A stretch of DNA of 64,000 nt from Paragordius varius (taxonomy: Eukaryota; Animalia; Nematomorpha), in the NCBI GenBank assembly GCA_964247055.1, contig OZ176052.1, forward strand, positions 5,394,001-5,458,000, in the 5' to 3' direction. Below are positions 18,801 through 36,639 of this stretch, piece after piece (the first letter of the stretch is position 1; each line of letters begins with the position of its first letter). The translations under genes and the position numbers were made by a program. The notes below the pieces were generated by a model. That model was not told where the DNA came from. It made no database searches and was given only the letters and a program-made list of their open reading frames with translations.

Positions 18801-19498
18801 TGAGATCTAACATGTTCCTCAAGTTTGTTTTTATATCGAAATTCGTTATTACAACCTAAAATTATTACCCATTAAATAAATATTTATACCTTTCCAATCA
18901 CAATGATATCTTTTTTCTAAAATGTCATCATCAATACGTTTTTCCAAATCAATGTGTTGTTGAACATGTTGATAAAATATTATGTAATTTTCAGTTTGAA
19001 ACTATTTTATAAAACAAAAATTATGATGGTAACACATATGCTTTAAAAAGTTTATTAATCTTACATCACAATCACCTTTAAACCATTGACATTTAATTGG
19101 ATCTAATGGCTCTGGAATAATGTTAGAACTAAATGAATCCATAGCACATTGTTGAGTTTGCAAATCAATAAGAGTTTTTCCTATGGATTTTAATTTAGTA
19201 TGAAATGCGTGAAAATATATGTGCCTGAGCAATTCTGATGCATAATCAGCTACGTAATCACATTTAGTCCATTTACATAGAGAGCCTAAAAATCAGGAAT
19301 AATTTTACTTATATTATAATCATGCTGTCGCTTCAAAATTTTAGATATATCTCCCGAAAATTCCTTACAAATATGGTCGTTTTCAATGTGAGAAACAAAA
19401 GGTAAAACATCATTAAAATTTTGATTACAGGAATTCCATTCGCATTGTAAAAATAGCTCTTTTACCGTAAAAAACTTTGGAATTTTGAGATCATCCAT
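6830..19498 (-). CDS. HINFP: Histone H4 transcription factor HINFP/MIZF orthologue, C2H2 zinc-finger protein with very large low-complexity insertions
   Basis: Spliced exons give [31 protein letters not shown]...[19 protein letters not shown]...[20 protein letters not shown]...[10 protein letters not shown] and [21 protein letters not shown]...[10 protein letters not shown], collinear with vertebrate HINFP. Exons: 19498-19309 (or -19369), 19285-19065, 19001-18890, 18855-18703, 18629-18552, 15469-15182, possibly 15102-15067 and 15036-14956, 14780-14651, 14564-14320, 12298-11921, 11757-10340, 10269-10145, 9780-8366, 7668-6830. Intron phases are consistent. Confidence 0.92.
12340..13875 (+). mobile_element. 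5'-truncated, internally deleted RTE-clade LINE, antisense in a HINFP intron
   Basis: RT motifs [36 protein letters not shown] and [10 protein letters not shown] Cys-rich CSIC...[13 protein letters not shown] insert. C-terminal [13 protein letters not shown] and RGKPYHDW. Ends in a (GAT)n tail. Many stops and frameshifts. Confidence 0.9.
15735..18393. mobile_element. 2.66-kb foldback element with ~1.05-kb diverged TIRs in HINFP intron 5
   Basis: Ends are TA|CAGTATCCATTTTGGTGTC ... GACACCAAAATGAATACTC|TA. 15735-16790 is the diverged reverse complement of 17310-18393. No transposase ORF was seen in the spacer. Confidence 0.8.
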
Positions 19499-20289: not shown

Positions 20290-23204
20290 ATGGATGAAGA
20301 AGATATTATGTATGGAGTTATAAAAATATGGGGAAAAAGTAAACTGATTATTTTAGTACAAAATGTTGCCTTTATATAGAGCTCGTCCCATCGAGAACAT
20401 AAATGAAATGTACCGCGAAATTAAAAAATTATGATAGTCCATTAATAGGTATTACATAATATTAGCAATAATTCATGATTTAGGATGATTGAAAATAATT
20501 TGATGTAAACAACACAGAATAAGTTTTATATAACTACATAATAGATTAATTGGAGTCATTAAGAAACAGGGCGGGATAATATATATCTGAAACAAAAACA
20601 TTTATACCTGTACATAAATATAATGTGTATTTACCCACATTAAAAATTAAATAAAAAATATGTGACCACCACTTCAATTGCTATAATGATAATTGTTTTC
20701 TTGGTAAAAACAACTTTATATTATTAAAAGTATATTATGTTATAAAAAATATATTAAGGGATGTTTCAACTTGTTTTTGTATCCAGCATCATAACAGGTA
20801 AAAATAGATGATTGAGATTATCTTTTACCCTCATGAAAAATAAAATTATTTATCATGATTCAAATATAGAGAGTGAGTTGAGAAAAATATAAAAATTTAA
20901 ATAAAAAATAGTTTGTACTAATTTATTTTTATTGGATATGCTAGCAAACCTGTTTAGTTTATACAAACATTCCTTTCTTTTTCACCTCAACGGCTTTGGC
21001 TAAAAAAATGCTTTTTTCTATTTTATAATTCAAATGATCAATCTTCCAGAACATAGGTAGCGTTCTCTATAATGATATATAATTATAAATAAATTTAACC
21101 ACAAACTGCTTTCGAATTAGATAAAGATTGTGTTGTATTCAATTCAAAGGTTATAACGGAAATATTCAAAAACGATTTAAAATAATACATTGCACAAAGT
21201 AAAAAATTAAAATATAATTTTGTGAAAAAAAATCGTTTTAATTTTTATACAAAAAATTTGCTTTAGGCCTATTGTTCTCTGGAGTTTTTGTTATGTATTT
21301 TATATTTATATTTTTGTATATAATCGCCTTTTTTTATACTGTTTTGCATGTCGAGAACCCCCCTTTGTAAATTCGATAACAAAAAAAATCATGTAAACAA
21401 TTTAAAAAAATTTCATATGTCTATGTTAACTAATAAATTTATTTTTAGCTTAAGATTAAAAAAACAATTTTTATTATATCTATGTATATGATACTTTCTC
21501 CAAAAAAAGCAAATGTACATAAAGTTAGTGACGTGGATTTTTTAAGATTAGAGTAGCATTTTTTCCATAAATTGCATAAAGCACAAAAACACAATAATGT
21601 TGACAAACTCAAAATATATTTTTTATGGAAAATTAAACTGGAACAAAATTTTTAAACTTAAATTTGTAACACCATATTATATTGTTGGCCATTAATAATG
21701 CAGTAGCGTATGATATCAAACAAATATTGTCCATAAATTATATAAAATATAACGTGTTAAGATAGAAACTAATTGTAATTTTAACCATTTGTTCTTTTAT
21801 ATTCCTATGGTACTATGCTGCCAATTGGACAAAAATAAGGTGAATTTGCCAACCATTATAATATTTTTTTGTTAAAGATATGTTTTATAACTGTAAGGGC
21901 TGGTTTTTTAGATTAATTAGGATATGCTAAAAAATGTTTTAATTTTTACATTGATTTAATTTGGTAAGATATTAAAAAAAAAATATGCGGTTACATAAAA
22001 TAATTAATATTACCACAATTTAATTATATTAGCATTTTAAAATGATATTAGTATTAAAACTCTTAAAATAGATTGTTTTTTAGCAAGGGATTGCAACCTG
22101 ATCACAACCAATTGACTTTGGAGAATTAAACAACTATAGATTATATTGTATTTTAAATAACTAAGATTTCCTATTAATTTTATCTTGTATATGCATAATG
22201 TTCATAAATGAAGAAGCACCCTTACATCCGTTAAAACCATTTTTTTATATCGATCTGGCTTCTATTTTCGCTTAATAGATTCGGTTTCGCTTCCATTTTT
22301 TAATTTTATATAATTGTCACCAGTTTGTAACTATGAAAATTGGTGTATTTGTTTTTTTAGATCGAAAACAAGATATATTTAAAAGAGGAAAAATAAAATA
22401 ACGTTTCCCACCTATCAAATATAATAAAAACAAAAAAATATTTTTGGGTCTAAAACGTTCCAAAAAAGCTAATAGTTTCAGTTCCGAACCCTGGCTACAA
22501 CAATATTTATAAACAAAAAATCCTTAGATATGATAATTTTTGAACATAAAGAGTTCTGAGCCAAACATTTTAAATAAATCGGCTCAAAAATAATTGAGAT
22601 GGGAAGATTTTGATCGATTTAAATATTTACACAACCTATAAGATTTAAGAGGAACACGTTTTTTCAAATGTATTTCAGTCGGTCTTTTTCACATGGCTTA
22701 TTCTCTTAGCCAAGATTGTGTCTGCTAAACGGCTCATTCCCATGGCCCTAATTTACATTTAAAGCTTTAAATAGAATCTCGTAAAATAATTCTCTAGCTA
22801 TTACAAGAAGTCATACAGCCCTTACCTTAAAATTATCCTAATATAATAATGAATTATGTAAATCATGGCACGGACAAAACTTAAAACAGGATCGCACAAA
22901 CATCATGAAAAAAGTAATTTTATATTGAAATTGTCATCTATTATTGGTCGGCATAAAACTAAAAAAGGTTTTGAAATTGGCCTAGAACGATTACTTTGAC
23001 CTACAAACGTCTGTTTTTCCGAAATTTTTATATTTTTAATAAATATAATTAAAGAAATTATAAAATCATATTAAAAAATCTTAAATTCTAGTAACAGTTG
23101 TAAAATCCGTATTATAATGATAATCGAAATTTAAATAGAAAATTAATTGAAAGATAATTAATAACAGTAATTATAAAACGATATGTGAAACCCTTTCGTA
23201 AATA

Positions 23205-23255
23205 GTAATCGTAAACTAGTTTCGTGCTTATTACTTACTCATCAGAGACACAACT
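23205..23255 (-). ncRNA. Minimal type I hammerhead ribozyme motif (left copy, stem I damaged)
   Basis: Minus strand reads GTGTCT-CTGATGA-GTAAGTAATAAGCAC-GAAA-CTAG-T-T-TACGAT, 2 nt shorter in stem I than the right copy. Confidence 0.5.
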
Positions 23256-23909
23256 ATTTGACTTGGGGTTTTCACTTATCGATTTTGTATATATTTTCAA
23301 CTTTGCAATTTTGGTATAAATGCAGTTGGTTATACGAATTTAAATTAAATTTAATGGACATTTATAAAAAAAACTGAAATTTTGAAAATAAACTGAAAAT
23401 TAACTCTAGGTGTAAGCCTAGATTTAGAGTATAGCTACTTAGGGATTACATAGAAATCAATTTAATAACTATAAAGCACTCTATTTTGATAAGAAACTAT
23501 TGACGAAGGGTTTCACATATCGTTTATAATTCTGTTTATGTTATTATTCAATTAATTTTCTATTTAAATTTCGATTATCATTATAATACGGATTTTACAA
23601 CTGTTATTACAAAACATAATAATCAATCCGTCATTTACCATTACAATATCATCTTTATCTTATGTTTCTTATCAAAATAGAGTGCTTATAAGTTATTTAA
23701 TTGATTTCTATGAAATCCCTAAGTAGCTATACTCTAAATCTAGGCTTACACCTAGAGTTAATTTTCAGTTTATTTTCAAAATTTCAGTTTTTTTTATAAA
23801 TGTCCATTAAATTTAATTTAAATTCGTATAACCAACTGCATTTATACCAAAATTGCAAAGTTGAAAATATATACAAAATCGATAAGTGAAAACTTCAAGT
23901 CAAATAGTT

Positions 23910-23956
23910 GTGTCTTACTGATGAGTAAGTAATAAGCACGAAACTAGTTTACGATT
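23910..23956 (+). ncRNA. Minimal type I hammerhead ribozyme motif (right copy)
   Basis: Reads GTCTTA-CTGATGA-GT..AC-GAAA-CTAG-T-T-TACGAT. The core is intact, stem III is palindromic (ACTAGT), the cleavage triplet is GUU, stem I pairs at 5 of 6 positions, and stem II is weak (2 bp). Confidence 0.6.
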
Positions 23957-24141
23957 ACTATTTACGAAAGGGTTTCACATATCGTTTTATAATTACTGTT
24001 ATTAATTATCTTTCAATTAATCTATTTACTCAGTTATCATTATAATACGGATCTTACAACTGTTATTACAAAACACAATCTATCCGTCATTTACCATTAC
24101 TTAAATTCTAATGTTCTGCTTAATGAAAAGTGAATATATTA

Positions 24142-27955: not shown

Positions 27956-30900
27956 CTACAGATCTCGTTCTGTTATAGTTAATGCAACTTGTGGGTATAA
28001 ATTTAGTTCCTTTAATGTTGAATTGGGATTGAGCGTTGATATCTACAATCAAAAATAAATTATATGCATGCATTTTATAATGGTTGCTTATTTCACACTA
28101 TAGTAGAGCAATATGCAACACAGGAGTGTATGGAAAAAAGAAAGGAAATGATTGTTTATTCAACTTTTTGTTGTTTTTTCCATACACTACTGTGTCGGCC
28201 CAACTATATTGTGAAATAAGCAACCATTAAAATTCATATTGTATATAATGAATCTAAAATATAATTCATTTATTTAAAAAATTCATACATCGCAATTGGG
28301 CCAATATGTCATGAATTTGTAATCGGCTTTATCATACCCAAGGGACGTTATGTAATCCAACAAATTTTGAAGGGTATGCGTTGCTAAAAATCGTCTTTGG
28401 TAAACAACTGCGGCTCCCTTTTCCTTAAAAATACAGCAATTATAATATATAATTTTGTTAACTACAATTTTTAAAATATATACAGTAATATAAATAAAAA
28501 TCAAAAATAAAAGATATATATCATTTAACGTGAAACTATTGATTAGTATCATGACTATGTTCAAAATGAAATTTTAACCATTATATATGAAATATATATA
28601 ACTTCTCAAATAAAATTACTCAATTTTTATATAGAATAATGTATTCAACAAACTTTTTCTCCATCAGGTTTGTTCGATGGTGTTATGTTAGGAGCCCGAA
28701 TTTTTATAACTGATATTGGCTCATTACATGTTTTGGGTGGTTCGATCGGTAGGGTGTCAATAAGTGATTGCCTTATAGCCTAAATAAAAATTATTTAGTA
28801 TTTTTAATAAAAAAAACAATTTTTATCATATACAAAAAACAGAATAAAATCCTTTTTATTCATTTTGGTATCGTGTTATCTTAAGATTATTGTATATAAT
28901 CTCGAAAAAAGTAGTTTGTTCAAGATTAACAAAAAATTTAATTAAATAAAAATACACAAGTGAAGCGAAAATCCAATGTCTAAACACCCAAAAAAAGATA
29001 TCAACCAAATTTTGGTTTCCAACGTCGACATTTTTTTTATTTTATAATTAAAATTAATAATAAACATCACCAAAAATAAAAAAAATAATTCAAATTGTTG
29101 GCCATTAATAAAAAACAAAAGCTTTATAAAGTTATTATTTTATGTATATTATAAAAATAATAAAAAATTAAAAAATCTTATAAAACCTACCGATTTCAAA
29201 GCACCTTTTAGCGAAAAATGAAACTTAGCTTTACACTTTCAAAAATTTTTATTTAGAAACCACCCCCCCTTTAAAATTTAGTTTAAACTAGTTACAAGCA
29301 TCTCTACAAATAGCTGAAACTTGGTTCAGGCAATTATACGTTAGCTGCAAAGTAGCCTTAAGCGTTTACTAACACATCTTCGACAAATTAAATTTCAAAC
29401 CACTTCTAAATTCTCCCTATTGTCACCTCCCTGCGGTGTTGGCTAGGGGATTAAAATGCGCTATTTAAAAAGGCCAGTTTTTTAATGATGTGTAAAATCA
29501 TTAGTTGTACACATGGGCATGTGTTACGTAAAAAATCGCTTCAATTAACCATGAAGTATGTATATCATGAATGATGTGAATTAATTCGTGAGAATAAAAC
29601 TTCGAACCCGAAGTATCCTGATTTTCACATAAATTCCCAATAAATGATAATATAAAAAAATAATGAGTAGAACAACCAACCTACCTCTTTTTCTTTTAGT
29701 TTGTATTCGTTTTCGGCATGCTTGATTTGTTGTTCAAGTTGTTCTTGTTCAAATTCTCTTTCTTTAGCGACTTTTTTGGCTTTATCAGCTTTGAGGGATA
29801 GGCGATAAGCTTCGTCCTGTTCTCTTTTAATGTTTTCACGCATATCCCTTTCCATCTATCAAAACGTAAATGATATTTTGGTTTCAAATACAGTGGTTTG
29901 GGAACATATTATGTGAAGGTGAAAATAGCCAAAATAGGTGATATATTATATTAAAAATATAATATAGATTTTTTTAAAGACTAATATTATATTACGTTTA
30001 CAAAACGTCCGCCCATCAACTAATTAGTTTATATTAATTATCATGCATTTTTTGTTATTTAAGGCTTAGTTTTTCAGCTACAATTGTACAAGGTTGGACA
30101 TATTTACAAACCAAGTAAAACTTTAATATTATTCAATTATGTTTTAAATTATCCAATATTATTGAATAATAAGGAATATCTATCATATAAAAACTTAAAA
30201 TGGTTTGTAAAGCCCTAATGCAGATAAAAGGCTACGTTTTTTTCGCGACAACAGTGGACATTTAAGACTATTAGAATTTAATCGGAAAATTAATAATTTT
30301 AAACCTCTTCCTGTAGGGCTGTTTCTTGGTAATGCTTAAACACATCTTCAGAGTGGATCAACATGGTCATTAAATCTTGAATTGAATTATTCCCTAAAAA
30401 TTTATGAATGTTTAAATTTATATTATTTACATAATTAAATATTTGATTTTGATTTCCAAATATAATTAAAATTATCAAAAACACTTAGTAATGAATAAAA
30501 GTTAAGCAAGAAATTCCTATGAAATGCAAATTTATTAAGGATTTAATGTTGAAAAAGCTATATAAATAAAGTAAAATACCTTTAAATATATTTAACATCT
30601 CATATTGTCCACGACACTTTTGAAAAATAATCAATGTGGGATATTCATTTAATTTTAGGTTCCTTATGGTATTCTCAAATGTTTTACCAAATTTCGAGCT
30701 TGCCATTTGTAAAAACCTATATAGTCAATAAAAAAATAATAAATTAGTCAACTATGTGATAATAATTTGTAAAATGAATCCAAATTTTTTTATCGATATT
30801 TCAGTCAATCATTTATAATTATATTTATAGCGTTATGATTTATATTGAAAAATAGTTTCTCATTAAACATTAATGATAATAAAATCAACTATGCTGTAAC

Positions 30901-33900
30901 AAAAATAATTTGACTAATCAAATTTTTATATTTTCTCAAAAAAATATTTTTTTAATTACAAATCTCGATTGCTTTCATGGGTCATGTCCCAAGGCCAAAC
31001 AATAAAATGGTTATCCAAATAATTGATTAACATTTCTGAGGTAAGGTTGATTGAACAAAAGATGTTGGCTAAAATGCTATTATCATGATGCAAATAGATG
31101 AGCAATAATTTTCTCTAAAACAAAAAAATATAATAAATAATTAAAAATTAAATATCGATATGGTATTTTATTATCAATAATAATATATAGGTCTTTAAAT
31201 GTTATTTAAAATAAATATTAATTAATATCCAACTAAAGATCGTCAAAAATCGTTAATTTAGTGATGTTATTATAAATATTATCGTAATATTTGAAGTGAA
31301 AAAAGGCTAATGTTGTGTACAATTATTTATTTGATAGATGTATAATTTTTTAACGATGTACGACTTCTTATTAAAAACATAATAATATTTATTTTGAATC
31401 GAATCAACAACTATTAAAGGGTAGGTTTTCATTTTTATAGGCAAACACCAAATTTTTAATGTAAATTTCACTATAAAATTATATGGAAAACAAAATATTA
31501 CAAAAAAATAATTTTACGATTAAAACGTTACCTCTAGGATTGGTAAATTACAAGATTGATCTAAGGCAGCTTTTAATGTACCGACAAAAAATTTTGGATG
31601 TATTTTTCCATATCTATTGTAATAAAACATTTAATTAATTAAATCATAAATATTGAAGATTAAAATGCGTTAAGAAGTTTATGGTTTTTATTAATAATTT
31701 ATTTTAAATAGAAAAATTCTGATTCCGGAGCACGTATTTAAAAAACTTCATAAGTATATCAAAAAATTGGTCAAAAAAATAAAACTATTTTATTAATAAA
31801 GGGGCAAATTATAGTCCAATTTCGTTATTAAACAATAAACTACAGTGGCAAGGCTTATTAAACGTTATAACCGGATGTGTAAAAAATATTTTAGCAACTT
31901 CACGGAGTCGGATATATTGCAAATTTAATTTAAATATAAATTTATCTAATTAGCTTAAAATTACAATAATTGTGAATAATTATCAAATTATTATATATAT
32001 TATATATACTTAAATTTAGTGTATTAATAAAAATTTTAAAAATTATATTGTAAAAAATTTCTTTATTCAAATTAAAATTGTATTATTACATATAAACAAA
32101 ACATGAATACATTAGGTGATTTATAAAATATAATCAAATTTGCAAAGAACCGATAGAAATAAGTTTGGTTAATGCTATAGAAATATATTTGCCGCATAGT
32201 CAATAAAATAAAACACGAATTATATAAATATATTCATACCTTTTCTCATATTGCGAGATAAAATGTTCATGTCCTTCTTTAATATCATTTGTATGTGGTA
32301 AAACTAAGAATATTTATAACAATAATAAAACAATTTAACTATGTAAATTTAATCTTTTAAATTCTGTAATAAATTTATCTTTTAAAAAATAAAATAGCAA
32401 ACCCTATGTAGAGATAAAAGCCCATAAAAAACTCTCTTAAAATCAGTTTTAAAAAATATTTTTTCTCCCATATATATATCAAAATTGTAAAAAAAGGGGA
32501 AATGCAAACTTAATGGGGTATGACTAGTTTGTGGCGTGTAACCAAATGTCGAATTATTAAAACTATCGTCGTGCATTGAGGTGTCCTCATACAAACATTC
32601 AATGTCAGAGGTATGATCCTCTTCGCTTGTGGAAGAAATATTAAGTGGTTTTGCTGCATTTTTAGCTTTTGCAATCTCAGGTATACTTGATTTACTTGGG
32701 ATGTTCTTATCTGAATCCGAAATACAGATGATTAATTGGATAAATTAATGAGCTGTCTATCCGAAAAGTATTTTTAATTTTATGACAAAGTGGTGATAAA
32801 ATAAATAATTTTTTAAAGGATTTAAATTAAGTTAGTACGGAGGGATAAGCTATTAATAAAAGTAAAATAGGGATTAGATTTTTTGAATAAAGGTAATTAT
32901 AGCCATATATTCATCATTTAGCCATTTTGCAATAATATAATTTTTTCGAAAAAAAATAAAAACAAATTTTTTTAATTATAATATAAACATGGTTTTGAAT
33001 GATAATGAACGACCAAAATATATAGTATATGATTACTATATGGTAAAAAGTATAAAAACCAAGTTTAAAAATAAATGTTCAATCATACATACCCAAATTT
33101 CGAATATTATTAGAGAAAGCGTTTTTGTTAGTTATATCATTATCCAAAACATTATTTTTGGTTTTATTGTTATGTGTATGTTTGGTATCATTTGAGAATG
33201 ATAATATATCATTGTTATTCCGTTTGGAAGAACAACAAGAAGAAGAAAAAGTTGGAATCGGAGAATTTAATCTCAAAGCAGGCGGTAGAATATCGCTGCT
33301 ATCCAAAAAATCGCCGTCCTCGCCATCATCATCCGAAATTATTACATTTTTGCTTTTAGTAGACACTAATAGAACATAATAAATTGTAAAAAAAATTTAG
33401 TGGAAAAATCTTTTTAAAACAATAATAAAAAGGTCCAATAAAAAAATGAAATGTAAAAAAGAGAAAAATTTTATAAGATGCATAGTCGGAACTGTGAAAC
33501 AATAAAAACTGAAATTACTAACTTTTTAAAAATCGTTATGGAACGAAAAACGGTTTATTTATTTTTTTAATTTTTAACACAGGGTAAAGAGGTTATTTTT
33601 ATTATCCTATTCTATGTATTAAGTGTATTTACGGCTTCAATATTGTTATATATATATGAATCTTAAGATCCATTTAACTATTTATTTATATTGTTTTAAA
33701 TAAGCATGGAAATGACGGGTATATATATATTAAAATAAAACAAAGGTAATTGAACCAATCAATTATTTTGATACTCTTAAAATCAACAACAAAAATTATA
33801 TAAAATTTAACATTTCCATAAATTTCAGTGCATTAAATTTAAATTCATATATAGGCAAAAACATCAGACCCCATTTAAGGTACATAACTAGGGAAAATTA

Positions 33901-35614
33901 TGGATAATAATAATTAACCATGCGTTGATGGTAAAAAGGAAGGAGAATCATCATACAAAAGATCCATCCTACTTCCATTGTCCAGATTTTCAACCTTCGC
34001 AATAATTGATAAAATTATTTAAATTTTATTTAAATTGCCATCTATTCAATTTTAAAATTTAGATATGTGATAAGAAGTATATAAAAGTATGAAAAATTAT
34101 ATCATTTTTGGCTTTTTCATTAAATCAGGTTAATTATTTTGATAAGTTTTTTATACTATTATGAAAATTAGATAAAATATTATGGTGTATTAGATATAAT
34201 TTTATTTTTATTTTACCCAATAAGTTTAATTACTTTTTTCTGGGTAACCTCCAATTCATTAATGTGATCAAAACCGAGCTCCTTTATTTTATTTGATTCC
34301 TAAATAGATTGAAAATGAATTATTTAAAATAAGTTATAGGGTATCAAATTATTTGAAAGATATCGAAAGAAATAAGATTTTAACTTGTATAATAATTACC
34401 CGACAAATTTCATTCTCAAATCCAATCCATGATTGTAGATATGAGGGTATATTTGTTACATTTGATATAAGATCTTTGAGCTATATATATTTTAACCATA
34501 TAATAATTATGATGGAAAATTTTGTCAAAATATTATCAATAAAACTATTTAATTTCTTCATTAAAAGTGGCATATAAACGGAATATCCGTAAAAATGTAC
34601 ACAGGCCCCTGGTTTAATTATTAATTTATTTTATAATAATGAATACAGATTTAATATGATATAAAAGAATTTGTTATCATATATATATATATATATATAT
34701 TGATTGATAAGATTAAGGGCCAAAATATATGTGTAAATAAATATTTTTAACATGTGTTAAAATAAAGTTTTGAGTGGTTAAATTTTCTAATTTAAACAAA
34801 CATTAATTATTAAACAGACGTATAAGGGTTAATTTTTAACAATTCCAATTATCCGCTTAAAAATGTAACTTTTATTAGCCAAGGTTTATATTTCAGATTT
34901 TACGAAAATTTAGTTTTATTTTATAGATCATACCTGTTTAACTGTTAAATCTGACGTTATTTCAATTGTGTGAATCTTGTCAGTCCTTTTGTCAATAATG
35001 TTTAATAATCTATAACACATCAGAAAAATTATAAAACCTTTTAGGATTTGAATTTATTTTCAATTTTAGATAATTATCATCTGGCAAAGATAAGGATGAT
35101 AGAGTTGTCTAAAAGTTAAAAATATTTTTGAACGTAATCATAGATCTTAACATCGTTCGTCCAACCAGAAAGTTCGATTTCATCCATGTTCACTTTAAAT
35201 CTATCACTTATATATTGTTTGAGTTTATCTGAAATATAATAAAAAGTACATTACCAATTTTTTGAGATTCAAGTACTTTTATTAACGAAACTTTTCCATT
35301 GTAATTAATATGAAAATTTATTATGCGGGGTTTATTTATAGAATTACTGTCCAGACTAGGGTGATTCTACAGTAATATATCAATTAATACTTGAAGACTA
35401 GTGTCATCAATTTCAATATCGTCAACTTTGTTAAATGCGTCATTTACAGATTTCTACAATAATTAAAACATGAAATTAACTATAAGATCCCAATCATTCT
35501 TTTCGAGATATCGAATAGCTTCATCGAAATCTTCTATCCCAGTACAAACCTTTGACCATTTATATAAAGACAAACCTGAAAATCTACCAAAATTGCATCT
35601 TTGTCTGAATTCAT
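27956..35614 (-). CDS. FAF1: FAS-associated factor 1 orthologue (UBA, 2 UBL, UAS, coiled coil, UBX), 21 exons, 755 aa
   Basis: Spliced N-terminus MNSDKDAILVDFQVCTGIEDFDEAIRYLEKNDWDLI, plus KPRIINFHINY, YGKIHPKFFVGTL, RKLLLIYLHHD...WPWDMT, RENIKREQDEAYRLSLKAD and RRFLATHTLQ. Exons: 35614-35576, 35549-35481, 35453-35391, 35366-35255, 35228-35134, 35108-35038, 35009-34934, 34480-34400, 34299-34234, 33994-33919, 33365-33093, 32710-32510, 32303-32240, 31613-31532, 31114-30960, 30716-30580, 30393-30305, 29855-29685, 28779-28654, 28423-28289, 28042-27956. The sum is 2268 nt, an exact multiple of 3. Confidence 0.95.
28068..28237. mobile_element. MITE family M1, full copy, in the last FAF1 intron
   Basis: TIRs ATGCATTTTATAATGGTTGCTTATTTCACACTATAGT / ACTATATTGTGAAATAAGCAACCATTAAAATTCAT. 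Confidence 0.8.
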
Positions 35615-35705
35615 CCTCGTAACTTTGGCTTTTAAAACGACTGTTATTATGTTATGATACAATTACCGAATGTTGCTTAAATCGTAAAAGAACTTACATT
35701 TCCCA
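35615..35705. promoter_or_regulatory. Putative compact bidirectional promoter / 5'UTR region
   Basis: 91 nt separate the FAF1 ATG (minus, 35614) from the ATG (plus, 35706) of a small divergent gene. The regulatory role is inferred. Confidence 0.45.
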
Positions 35706-36035
35706 ATGTTGCATACAAGCTATAATAATGTGCTTAAAAAGGTGGATGAGCTCATGTCTACCCGCAGACTGTTTCCAGGAATCGTCGTGACATTGGGATT
35801 TTGGGGATTGTATTGGATTTATAATGGCTACGTAATTTTAATCAATATTTTTACCATATAGTATATCTATAAAGATACGCATCCATACATATATGTGAAA
35901 GAAATGGGACAAGATGGAAAAATGAAAACCAAAAAACTTACTGGTCTCATGTATCAAAAAATGCCACCAGAGGATATAGATTACAGTCAACAGTTTTATT
36001 CATTCGATGCCATTGATCATCGTAATAAACAATGA
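35706..36035 (+). CDS. Uncharacterised 99-aa single-pass membrane protein (2 exons, 30-nt intron)
   Basis: Exon 35706-35831 (MLHTSYNNVLKKVDELMSTRRLFPGIVVTLGFWGLYWIYNGY), GT-AG intron 35832-35861 ending in an in-frame TAG, and exon 35862-36035 (YIYKDTHPYIYVKEMGQDGKMKTKKLTGLMYQKMPPEDIDYSQQFYSFDAIDHRNKQ*). Both exons are GC-enriched against the flanks, and there is one hydrophobic helix. Confidence 0.62.
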
Positions 36036-36639
36036 AATTAGATAAAAATATAATTATAGCTTGAAATCATAATTAAATTAATAATACCTATATTTATATT
36101 TTTTTGGATAAATTGTCAAAATGTTTGGTTTATCAGAGCTGTGACTCAAAATTTTCGTTCTTGCTACCTCTTGTATTTTGTTACTACGCTTCCTAAAGGT
36201 TTTACCCACTTTTAATTACCTATTTTAAATTTATATTAACTAAAGTAAACTTTTATAAAAATAGCTTCATATTATTAACTTAAACAGTTTTGGCTCCGAT
36301 CCCTCCAATTAATTTATTTTACAAATTAAGAGAGCGCATAAAAAATTAATTAATTAGACAAAATTTTAAAAAACTTTTTTTAGTCGAATTGTAAATTTTG
36401 TATGCTAAAATATCAAGTTTTAATTATTAGGTTTTATGTTGAGCATACGCAAAAGGTTGAATATGTATTTTTGGATTTTGTTTACGCTGAAGTTTTATTG
36501 TATTAATATTGGGATTATGATTCAGTAAAACTTGAATGAGATTTGTGAATTTACGATTACTACAAGTAATTTTTGTCGAACGTAAAAAATAAAATTATAT
36601 ATAAAAATTTTTAATGAGATAAAATAAAAAAACATGTGT

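What the first reader, a model, noticed from the sequence alone, without database searches (positions are those of the whole stretch)
34934..35614. Six consecutive 24-28-nt spliceosomal introns at the start of FAF1
Seen: GT-AG introns at 35575-35550 (26 nt), 35480-35454 (27), 35390-35367 (24), 35254-35229 (26), 35133-35109 (25) and 35037-35010 (28). Removing them gives an uninterrupted match to the FAF1 UBA and UBL domains (DFQ|VCTGIE, WDLI|KSVN, QKI-D-KLKQ), while retaining any one gives a stop or frameshift. Several donors are weak (GTTTGT, GTTCAA, GTTTTA). Established: introns this short are known from ciliates, microsporidia, nucleomorphs and dicyemids, and lie below the default minimum of many gene finders. 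Inference: this animal's spliceosome handles ~25-nt introns while also splicing multi-kb ones, which is the best candidate here for an undescribed system. Intron 5 has an alternative in-frame donor (43 nt).
Basis: partly seen in the sequence, partly recalled or inferred. Interest (0 to 1): 0.92.

Follow-up and report, generated by a model that had tools for sequence, protein, structure and literature searches.

The report
Six tiny introns in FAF1 gene
The start of an intact FAF1 gene in what is most likely a horsehair worm is split by six introns of only 24-28 bases that sit where a related horsehair worm and a mussel have longer introns, which would add a third animal group to those known to have introns under 30 bases, although no RNA data could be obtained to show the splicing.

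Summary
Removing the six GT-AG segments (26, 27, 24, 26, 25 and 28 nt, minus strand, 35575-35010) gives one 175-codon open frame from ATG 35614. Retaining any one gives a stop within about 15 codons.

The spliced product matches the UBA and UBL1 domains of about 45 FAF1 proteins. The closest is Gordionus (Nematomorpha): 62% identity over the C-terminal half, against 41% or less for all others.

Introns 1, 2, 4 and 5 lie at exactly the same alignment column and phase as Gordionus introns of 42-56 nt and mussel introns of 1.2-5.9 kb. Introns 3 and 6 share the phase but lie in gappy linkers, so their exact borders are less sure.

A second DNA run carries four of the six segments unspliced, so they are not assembly errors. 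The rest of the gene has introns of 100 to about 1250 nt.

No RNA evidence was obtainable: three RNA-labelled runs held nothing at this locus.

Best reading (0.85): real spliceosomal micro-introns, shrunk from ancestral introns. They resemble the 5'-clustered microintrons of flatworms but are shorter, as short as those of dicyemids and myxobolids. I found no published report for nematomorphs.

This scan has already noted the same class at many other loci of this genome, so this locus is one more well-supported instance, not a first sighting.

The parts
35576..35614 (-). FAF1 exon 1 (39 nt, ATG at 35614-35612; MNSDKDAILVDFQ)
   Evidence: the Gordionus protein starts MNS-KDNTVADFQ
35550..35575 (-). 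micro-intron 1, 26 nt, GTTTGT...TCAAAG, phase 0
   Evidence: same column and phase as the Gordionus 42-nt and mussel 5928-nt introns; present in X3 DNA contig 35486-35834
35481..35549 (-). exon 2 (69 nt; same length in Gordionus and mussel); core of the UBA domain
   Evidence: Pfam UBA_4 positions 11-29 of 43, 26.5 bits, above cut-off
35454..35480 (-). micro-intron 2, 27 nt, GTTAAT...TTGTAG, phase 0, in-frame TAA
   Evidence: same column and phase as the Gordionus 46-nt and mussel 1162-nt introns. The laid X3 contigs stop at 35449 and resume at 35486, so this intron was not covered
35391..35453 (-). exon 3 (63 nt; end of UBA and start of the linker)
35367..35390 (-). micro-intron 3, 24 nt, GTATTA...CTGTAG, phase 0, in-frame TAG; borders less certain
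   Evidence: phase 0 like Gordionus intron 3 (63 nt), 6 columns away in a gappy linker; absent in the mussel. GC is 0.21, against 0.50 for the rival 24-nt choice 35370-35347. Present in X3 contig 35267-35449
35255..35366 (-). exon 4 (112 nt; first half of UBL1)
35229..35254 (-). micro-intron 4, 26 nt, GTAATG...TTTCAG, phase 1
   Evidence: same column and phase as the Gordionus 45-nt and mussel 2509-nt introns; present in X3 contig 35117-35267
35134..35228 (-). exon 5 (95 nt; also 95 nt in Gordionus, 92 nt in the mussel; second half of UBL1)
35109..35133 (-). micro-intron 5, 25 nt, GTTCAA...TTTTAG, phase 0; an alternative in-frame donor at 35151 would give 43 nt
   Evidence: same column and phase as the Gordionus 56-nt and mussel 5750-nt introns. 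The 43-nt form would delete six residues (VKIYDY) and break the conserved 95-nt exon length. X3 covers it only in part: contigs end at 35096 and start at 35117
35038..35108 (-). exon 6 (71 nt; end of UBL1 and linker)
35010..35037 (-). micro-intron 6, 28 nt, GTTTTA...TTATAG, phase 2; borders less certain
   Evidence: phase 2 like the Gordionus (666 nt) and mussel (1408 nt) introns, 6-8 columns away in a gappy linker. ORF-preserving alternatives of 31, 43 and 52 nt exist. Present in X3 contig 34973-35096 with one C>T change on the gene's strand
34934..35009 (-). exon 7 (76 nt; start of UBL2), followed by the first long intron
34481..34933 (-). intron 7, 453 nt, GTATGA...ATATAG, phase 0: first ordinary intron, marking the size switch
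   Evidence: same column and phase as the Gordionus 2001-nt and mussel 401-nt introns
27956..34480 (-). rest of FAF1. UBL2 exons are 34480-34400 and 34299-34234. An unresolved acidic/linker part lies at about 34000-32500. UAS to UBX exons are 32303-32240, 31613-31532, 31114-30960, 30716-30580, 30393-30305, 29855-29685, 28779-28650, about 28383-28289, and 28042-27959 plus the stop. Introns are 100 to about 1250 nt
   Evidence: spliced alignments. Exon lengths 64, 82, 155, 137 and 89 nt are identical to Gordionus and the mussel. Pfam PF21021, 77.5 bits. 61.6% identity to Gordionus over 333 aa

Best explanation
The six segments are genuine U2-type (GT-AG) spliceosomal introns of an intact, functional FAF1 gene in a nematomorph (horsehair worm) related to, but distinct from, Gordionus. 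They are ancestral bilaterian introns that shrank in this lineage: kilobases in a mussel, 42-63 nt in Gordionus, 24-28 nt here, which is probably close to the lower limit this spliceosome tolerates. Inferred mechanism: each is recognised across the intron (intron definition) as a short, U-rich, AG-free stretch. It starts at a minimal GT donor and ends at the first AG some 24-28 nt downstream, with a branch adenosine a few bases before that AG and no real polypyrimidine tract. From intron 7 on, the same pre-mRNA carries ordinary introns of 100 to about 1250 nt. Shown: the anatomy, the reading frames, the homology, the positions and phases, and the presence of the segments in DNA. Inferred: their removal from RNA, the branch points and the mode of recognition.
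For: Frames: one 175-aa ORF after removal, and a stop within about 15 codons if any one is kept. Homology: the spliced product hits the UBA (residues 1-45, spanning junctions 1 and 2) and UBL1 (about 61-145, spanning junctions 4 and 5) of about 45 full-length FAF1 proteins. Exon 2 alone is the middle of Pfam UBA_4. Orthologue: Gordionus XP_065321057.1 is by far the closest, at 61.6% and 40% identity against 41% and 26% or less for all others. Its gene has the same exon pattern, with first introns of 42, 46, 63, 45 and 56 nt followed by 666-2001 nt. Positions: introns 1, 2, 4, 5 and 7 have identical column and phase in the window, Gordionus and the mussel Sinanodonta; introns 3 and 6 have the same phase within 6-8 gappy columns. 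The chance of four exact coincidences is about 2.5e-7. Composition: micro-introns have GC 0.205, like the long introns (0.217) and unlike the exons (0.29-0.34). All six acceptors are the first AG after the donor. The six are U-rich (T 0.42 or more), whereas the three exonic GT...AG decoys of similar length are not (T 0.31 or less). DNA: contigs of another run (X3, a different organism label) carry introns 1, 3, 4 and 6 in place.
Against: There is no RNA evidence. The three RNA-labelled runs with the same species label as X1 hold nothing of this locus, and one of my two read-laying runs was lost to a filter. Four of six donors have T at +3 and none resembles the GTAAGT consensus. Branch points cannot be assigned from six sequences. 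For every junction other ORF-preserving GT...AG choices exist, and more distant guide proteins pick some of them. For introns 3 and 6 homology does not fix the border. The middle (linker) part of the gene model is unresolved, so the intactness of the whole gene is inferred from its conserved ends. X3 may not be independent of the assembly's source population.
Confidence: 0.85

Rival explanations
1. The introns are real, but one or more junctions differ from those drawn, or are used alternatively. Examples are the 43-nt form of intron 5, the 31/43/52-nt forms of intron 6, and 35370-35347 or the 60/81-nt forms of intron 3. This rival overlaps the best explanation and does not exclude it.
For: Two to ten ORF-preserving GT...AG choices exist per junction. 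Distant guide proteins choose the 35152 donor or 35017/34985 borders in some alignments. Introns 3 and 6 lie in linkers that do not align well.
Against: The nearest orthologue recovers all six as drawn. The exon lengths of 69 and 95 nt equal those of Gordionus. The drawn introns are the AT- and U-rich choices, whereas the rivals include GC-richer coding-like sequence. The phases match Gordionus at all six.
Confidence: 0.2
2. The 5' end of the gene is decaying. The segments are insertions that are not removed, and the protein, if any, starts downstream without UBA and UBL1.
For: No RNA evidence. The donors are weak. No full-length FAF1 of this species is in the protein collections.
Against: All seven exon pieces stay open and conserved, including the 40% identity to Gordionus over the N-terminal part. 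The interruptions are all GT...AG, lie at ancestral intron positions with the right phases, and have intron-like composition. Random decay would not produce this.
Confidence: 0.04
3. The segments are removed at the DNA level, as germline-limited internal sequences, and not by splicing.
For: Not directly excluded, because no somatic-versus-germline DNA comparison was possible.
Against: The borders are GT...AG at conserved intron positions and phases. The only other DNA run laid shows the retained form and no joined form (no joints). The Gordionus orthologue is annotated with introns at the same sites.
Confidence: 0.02
4. Assembly or sequencing artefacts created the segments.
For: None found.
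Against: X3 contigs reproduce introns 1, 3, 4 and 6 base for base, apart from one substitution. X1 and X2 hold 96% and 74% of the sampled words. The segments are complex sequence, not homopolymer slips.
Confidence: 0.01

Closest known systems
Flatworm microintrons (Opisthorchis felineus, Clonorchis, Schistosoma, Echinococcus, Macrostomum; PMC6530080)
   Same: A discrete class of very short introns that cluster next to each other, sit preferentially at the 5' end of genes, often lack a polypyrimidine tract, and coexist with kb-long introns in the same genes. They are easily missed by gene finders with default minimum intron lengths.
   Different: The flatworm peaks lie at about 37 and 90 nt, against 24-28 nt here, below the 30-nt mark. 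The phylum is different (Platyhelminthes against Nematomorpha). Flatworm microintrons are reported to have splice sites closer to the consensus, whereas here four of six donors have T at +3.
Ultra-short introns of Dicyema japonicum and myxobolid myxozoans (PMC13644364)
   Same: Animal GT-AG introns of about 22-27 nt at conserved positions between conserved exons. Splice-site motifs are reduced (little beyond GT and AG), with A residues a few bases before the AG as the likely branch site. The hosts are parasitic lineages.
   Different: There the short length is the genome-wide median in compact genomes. Here it is one class at the 5' end of a gene whose other introns are 100 to about 1250 nt, in an AT-rich genome with large intergenic spaces. 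That paper surveyed 51 animal genomes and names only these two lineages; its main text does not mention nematomorphs.
Gordionus sp. m RMFG-2023 FAF1-like gene (XP_065321057.1 / CAK9302705.1)
   Same: Orthologue with the same exon pattern, phases and 5'-short/3'-long intron architecture; exons 2 and 5 have identical lengths (69 and 95 nt).
   Different: Its short introns are 42-63 nt, and its sixth intron is 666 nt rather than 28 nt.
Tiny introns of ciliates (Paramecium about 25 nt, Stentor 15-16 nt) and nucleomorphs
   Same: The length range, and stops or frameshifts on retention.
   Different: Those are unicellular lineages where nearly all introns are tiny, with no coexisting long introns in the same gene. 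This comparison is from general knowledge and PMC13644364, and was not tested here.

Membership tests
U2-type GT-AG spliceosomal introns | GT at the 5' end and AG at the 3' end | tested here: met
   all six
U2-type GT-AG spliceosomal introns | Precisely removed from the mature mRNA | tested here: inconclusive
U2-type GT-AG spliceosomal introns | Removal restores the reading frame of a conserved protein; retention breaks it | tested here: met
U2-type GT-AG spliceosomal introns | Position and phase shared with introns of orthologues | tested here: met
   introns 1, 2, 4 and 5 match exactly in Gordionus and the mussel; introns 3 and 6 share the phase at nearby columns
U2-type GT-AG spliceosomal introns | Branch-point adenosine and polypyrimidine tract upstream of the AG | tested here: inconclusive
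   A residues lie 6-13 nt before each AG, and TTCTGAT and TTTTAAC motifs occur in introns 6 and 5. Six sequences are too few, and there is no clear pyrimidine tract beyond general U-richness
U12-type introns | Donor /RTATCCTT and branch site TCCTTAAC | tested here: not met
   none of the six donors or interiors has these motifs
Animal ultra-short introns of the dicyemid/myxobolid kind | Length under 30 nt | tested here: met
   24-28 nt
Animal ultra-short introns of the dicyemid/myxobolid kind | The short length is the genome-wide norm (median 22-27 nt) | tested here: not met
   in this gene only 6 of about 19 introns are tiny and the rest are 100 to about 1250 nt; a genome-wide census was not possible
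Flatworm-type microintrons | Clustered next to each other at the 5' end, beside long introns | tested here: met
   six in a row from the first exon, then 453 nt and longer
Flatworm-type microintrons | Length peak about 37 nt (and 90 nt) | tested here: not met
   24-28 nt here; the neighbouring gene has 30 nt, and the HINFP-like gene has 23 and 34 nt
FAF1 (FAS-associated factor 1) proteins | N-terminal UBA domain | tested here: met
   Pfam UBA_4 on exon 2; phmmer matches to residues 1-45 of FAF1 proteins
FAF1 (FAS-associated factor 1) proteins | Ubiquitin-like domains after the UBA | tested here: met
   phmmer matches of residues about 61-145 to the UBL1 region of homologues; alignment. No Pfam hit on the single short exons
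FAF1 (FAS-associated factor 1) proteins | UAS (FAF1, PF21021) domain | tested here: met
   77.5 and 26.6 bits on two exons
FAF1 (FAS-associated factor 1) proteins | C-terminal UBX domain | tested here: met
   61.6% identity to Gordionus through to the C-terminus. Pfam UBX is only weak (E 0.021) on a 31-aa exon piece
Nematomorpha (source organism) | Proteins group with nematomorph orthologues to the exclusion of other animals | tested here: met
   one gene only: FAF1 is 61.6% identical to Gordionus against 41% or less for about 150 other FAF1 sequences. The GC of about 25% resembles the 26.9% of Gordionus (10.1101/2023.06.26.546503). No tree was built and no other nematomorph was available

The most novel reading that the evidence does not exclude
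Horsehair worms of this lineage have a distinct micro-intron splicing mode. A U-rich stretch is cut from a bare GT to the first AG about 22-28 nt downstream (a length ruler rather than a classical branch site plus pyrimidine tract), and this works side by side with ordinary splicing of long introns in the same pre-mRNA. Because such introns fall below the minimum intron length of common gene finders, part of the reported large-scale 'loss' of universal animal genes in nematomorph genomes (for example BUSCO 71.6% in Gordionus) could be an annotation artefact in the species with the shortest introns.
Probability: 0.3. Interest if true: 0.8.

Novelty: new member of a known kind. Interest (0 to 1): 0.6.

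Why it matters
A paper of September 2026 (PMC13644364) states that animal introns under 30 nt are known only from myxobolid myxozoans and dicyemids, both with compact genomes. A nematomorph would be a third, independent lineage. It would also be the first in which such introns sit as a 5' cluster in the same transcripts as ordinary long introns, in a genome that is not compact.

That makes it a natural system for asking what sets the lower length limit of the animal spliceosome, and how one spliceosome handles both extremes. The series mussel (kb), Gordionus (42-63 nt), this species (24-28 nt) at identical sites shows the shrinkage step by step.

Practically, gene models and completeness scores for these genomes will be wrong wherever software refuses introns this short.

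Tried and rejected
- **RNA evidence.** Two run searches (two searches were busy) found only RNA-labelled runs with next to none of the sampled words. The second laid X9, X10 and X11 with zero contigs.
- **Own-species protein.** I looked for a transcript- or annotation-derived FAF1 of the window's own species, using the Gordionus protein and then an alignment seeded with window exons. Only Gordionus and distant insects came back.
- **Whole spliced protein in database tools.** Not done, because spliced sequences have no reference. I used exon pieces and local scripts instead.
- **Sea-urchin gene model.** My exact-match model builder found no model in L002, so the urchin was dropped from the intron comparison.
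- **ORF-path null model.** It is only moderately discriminating.
- **Middle of the gene.** My spliced aligner gave inconsistent exons for about 34000-32500 with different guides. I left that part unresolved.
- **Rfam.** A scan of the window found no snRNA or any other family.
- **Neighbouring 99-aa gene.** No Pfam family and no homologue.
- **X3 differences.** The three changes in 34973-35096 (one in intron 6, two conservative replacements in linker codons, worked out by hand) are too few to compare intron and exon constraint.
- **Literature.** No paper in the library links nematomorphs with intron length. The Cunha et al. 2023 nematomorph genome paper is not in the library and could not be checked.

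Full report
**What is there.**
On the minus strand an ATG at 35614 opens a frame that is interrupted six times within 680 nt. The interruptions measure 26, 27, 24, 26, 25 and 28 nt, and each begins with GT and ends with AG. Taking them out joins seven exon pieces (39, 69, 63, 112, 95, 71 and 76 nt) into one 175-codon frame. The unspliced stretch has stops in all three frames. Keeping any one segment gives a stop at codon 27, 42, 65, 110, 132 or 159. The two segments whose length is a multiple of three carry in-frame stops.

**More than chance?**
A dynamic-programming control allowed up to six GT...AG removals of 20-30 nt from 145 random ATGs of the window. It gave a mean open path of 100 nt and a 95th percentile of 418 nt, against 533 nt at this locus. 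This is suggestive only, because the control set still contains real genes. The real weight comes from homology and intron positions.

**What the gene is.**
- A conserved downstream exon (31114-30959) retrieved 291 FAF1-type proteins from 1.84 billion representatives.
- The spliced 175 residues match the N-termini of about 45 full-length members. Residues 1-45 match the UBA domain, spanning junctions 1 and 2. Residues about 61-145 match the first ubiquitin-like domain, spanning junctions 4 and 5.
- Exon 2 alone scores above Pfam's cut-off for UBA_4, positions 11-29 of 43. That is what one expects if the domain is split by introns 1 and 2. The UAS exons hit PF21021 at 77.5 bits.
- Downstream exons of 64, 82, 155, 137 and 89 nt have exactly the lengths of their counterparts in Gordionus and in a mussel.
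- The gene runs to a stop at about 27956. A linker part at about 34000-32500 could not be modelled consistently.

**Whose gene it is.**
The best hit is FAF1-like XP_065321057.1 / CAK9302705.1 of Gordionus sp. m RMFG-2023, a horsehair worm. Identity is 61.6% over the C-terminal 333 residues and 40% over the N-terminal part. Every other sequence fetched reaches 41% and 26% or less. The window's GC of about 25% is like the 26.9% reported for Gordionus (10.1101/2023.06.26.546503). The source is therefore most likely a nematomorph, but not Gordionus itself. This rests on one gene and no tree.

**The decisive comparison.**
I rebuilt the Gordionus gene from its locus (L001).
- Gordionus exons are 36, 69, 87, 184, 95 and 92 nt and onward.
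- Its introns are 42, 46, 63, 45 and 56 nt, then 666, 2001 and 221 nt and onward.
- The mussel Sinanodonta woodiana (L003) has introns of 5928, 1162, 2509, 5750 and 1408 nt and onward.

On a protein alignment, introns 1, 2, 4, 5 and 7 of the window fall in the same column and phase as introns of both species. Intron 3 shares phase 0 with Gordionus intron 3, six columns away in a gappy linker, and is absent in the mussel. Intron 6 shares phase 2 with both, 6-8 columns away in another gappy linker. Four exact coincidences among 525 possible sites have a chance of about 2.5e-7.

So do two more distant guides, while others differ at single junctions. The tiny segments are therefore ancestral introns that have shrunk.

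**Not an assembly error.**
Contigs of a DNA run filed under another organism label (X3) carry introns 1, 3, 4 and 6 in place, with one substitution in intron 6. No joined form was seen.

**RNA.**
No RNA evidence was obtained. The only RNA-labelled runs offered (X9-X13, same species label) hold next to none of the sampled words. X9, X10 and X11 laid no contig on 34720-36100. No full-length FAF1 of the window's own species is in the protein collections.

**Anatomy of the tiny introns.**
- GC is 0.205, like the long introns of the gene (0.217) and unlike its exons (0.29-0.34).
- The donors are GTTTGT, GTTAAT, GTATTA, GTAATG, GTTCAA and GTTTTA. Nothing is conserved beyond GT, and T stands at +3 in four of six.
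- Four acceptors end in TAG, one in CAG and one in AAG.
- In all six the acceptor is the first AG after the donor (P about 0.012 from the local AG frequency).
- Of the 31 GT dinucleotides in the region, only 11 have their first AG 18-34 nt away. Six are the introns, two are nested inside them, and three are exonic decoys.
- The introns have T of 0.42 or more and GC of 0.27 or less. The decoys have T of 0.31 or less and GC of 0.32 or more.

This fits recognition across the intron of a short U-rich, AG-free stretch, but six cases cannot establish a rule.

**How it most likely works.**
- Shown: the segments exist in DNA. They must be absent from the message for a conserved protein to be made. They occupy ancestral intron sites.
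- Inferred: they are removed by the major spliceosome through intron definition, with a branch adenosine 6-13 nt before the AG and no true pyrimidine tract. This is what has been proposed for myxozoan and dicyemid introns (PMC13644364).
- Inferred: the narrow 24-28 nt range suggests they sit at the lower length limit.
- Open: why only the first six introns shrank. Gordionus shows the same 5'-short/3'-long pattern at a larger scale, and flatworms show the same clustering (PMC6530080).

**Comparison with what is known.**
- PMC13644364 (Sept 2026) surveyed 51 animal genomes and found introns under 30 nt only in myxobolids and Dicyema. It predicted that more lineages would turn up. Nematomorphs are not mentioned in its main text, and its supplements were not available.
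- PMC6530080 describes flatworm microintrons (peaks at 37 and 90 nt) that cluster at 5' ends beside 3-kb introns.
- The present case has the flatworm architecture at the dicyemid/myxozoan length, in a third phylum.
- No paper in the searchable library links nematomorphs with intron length. The 2023 Acutogordius/Nectonema genome paper is not held, so I cannot exclude a remark there.

**Within this scan.**
Earlier notes report the same class at many other loci of this genome. I used them as leads only. This locus adds six in a row, with orthologous intron positions in a nematomorph relative and a mussel.

**Verdict.**
The reading as real micro-introns is supported at about 0.85. Exact borders are firm for introns 1, 2, 4 and 5, and probable for introns 3 and 6. 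It is a new lineage for a known kind of feature. Proof by RNA is still missing.

Noticed in passing
window 35706-36035 (+): A small gene lies head-to-head with FAF1, with the two ATGs 91 nt apart. Exon 1 is 35706-35831, a 30-nt GT-AG intron is 35832-35861 (GTAATT...ATATAG), and exon 2 runs 35862-36035. The product is 99 aa with a hydrophobic stretch. It has no Pfam family and no homologue by word search.
   Followed up: partly
window 19498-18500 (-): The 5' end of the HINFP-like zinc-finger gene (ATG at 19498) appears to carry introns of 23 nt (19308-19286), 63 nt (19064-19002), 34 nt (18889-18856) and about 72 nt in a row, before an intron of about 3 kb. I read this by eye and compared it only with my memory of human HINFP, not with a fetched homologue.
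   Followed up: partly
L001 3001-16093 (Gordionus FAF1): The Gordionus orthologue shows the same 5'-short/3'-long switch at a larger scale: introns of 42, 46, 63, 45 and 56 nt, then 666-2001 nt. The architecture therefore predates the split of the two worms, and only the minimum length differs.
   Followed up: yes
window 29855-29685 and 28779-28289 (-): Compared with Gordionus, the window's FAF1 lacks one intron: exons of 81 and 90 nt are fused into 171 nt. It also seems to have an extra intron of about 266 nt inside the UBX exon (219 nt in Gordionus, 216 nt in the mussel). So there is intron loss and possibly gain as well as shrinkage.
   Followed up: partly
window 34000-32500 (-): The acidic/Ser-Asn-rich linker of FAF1 (for example the open stretches 33396-33082 and 32744-32385) could not be modelled. 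Different guide proteins give incompatible exons, and more tiny introns may hide there.
   Followed up: partly
window 34720-36100, runs X3, X6, X7, X8: DNA runs filed under four other organism labels hold parts of this locus. X3 is over 99% identical at low depth. They are either very close relatives or other samples that contain this worm.
   Followed up: no
window 23090-24100: A first-reader note mentions hammerhead ribozyme cores here. The Rfam gathering-threshold scan of the whole window returned no family at all.
   Followed up: no
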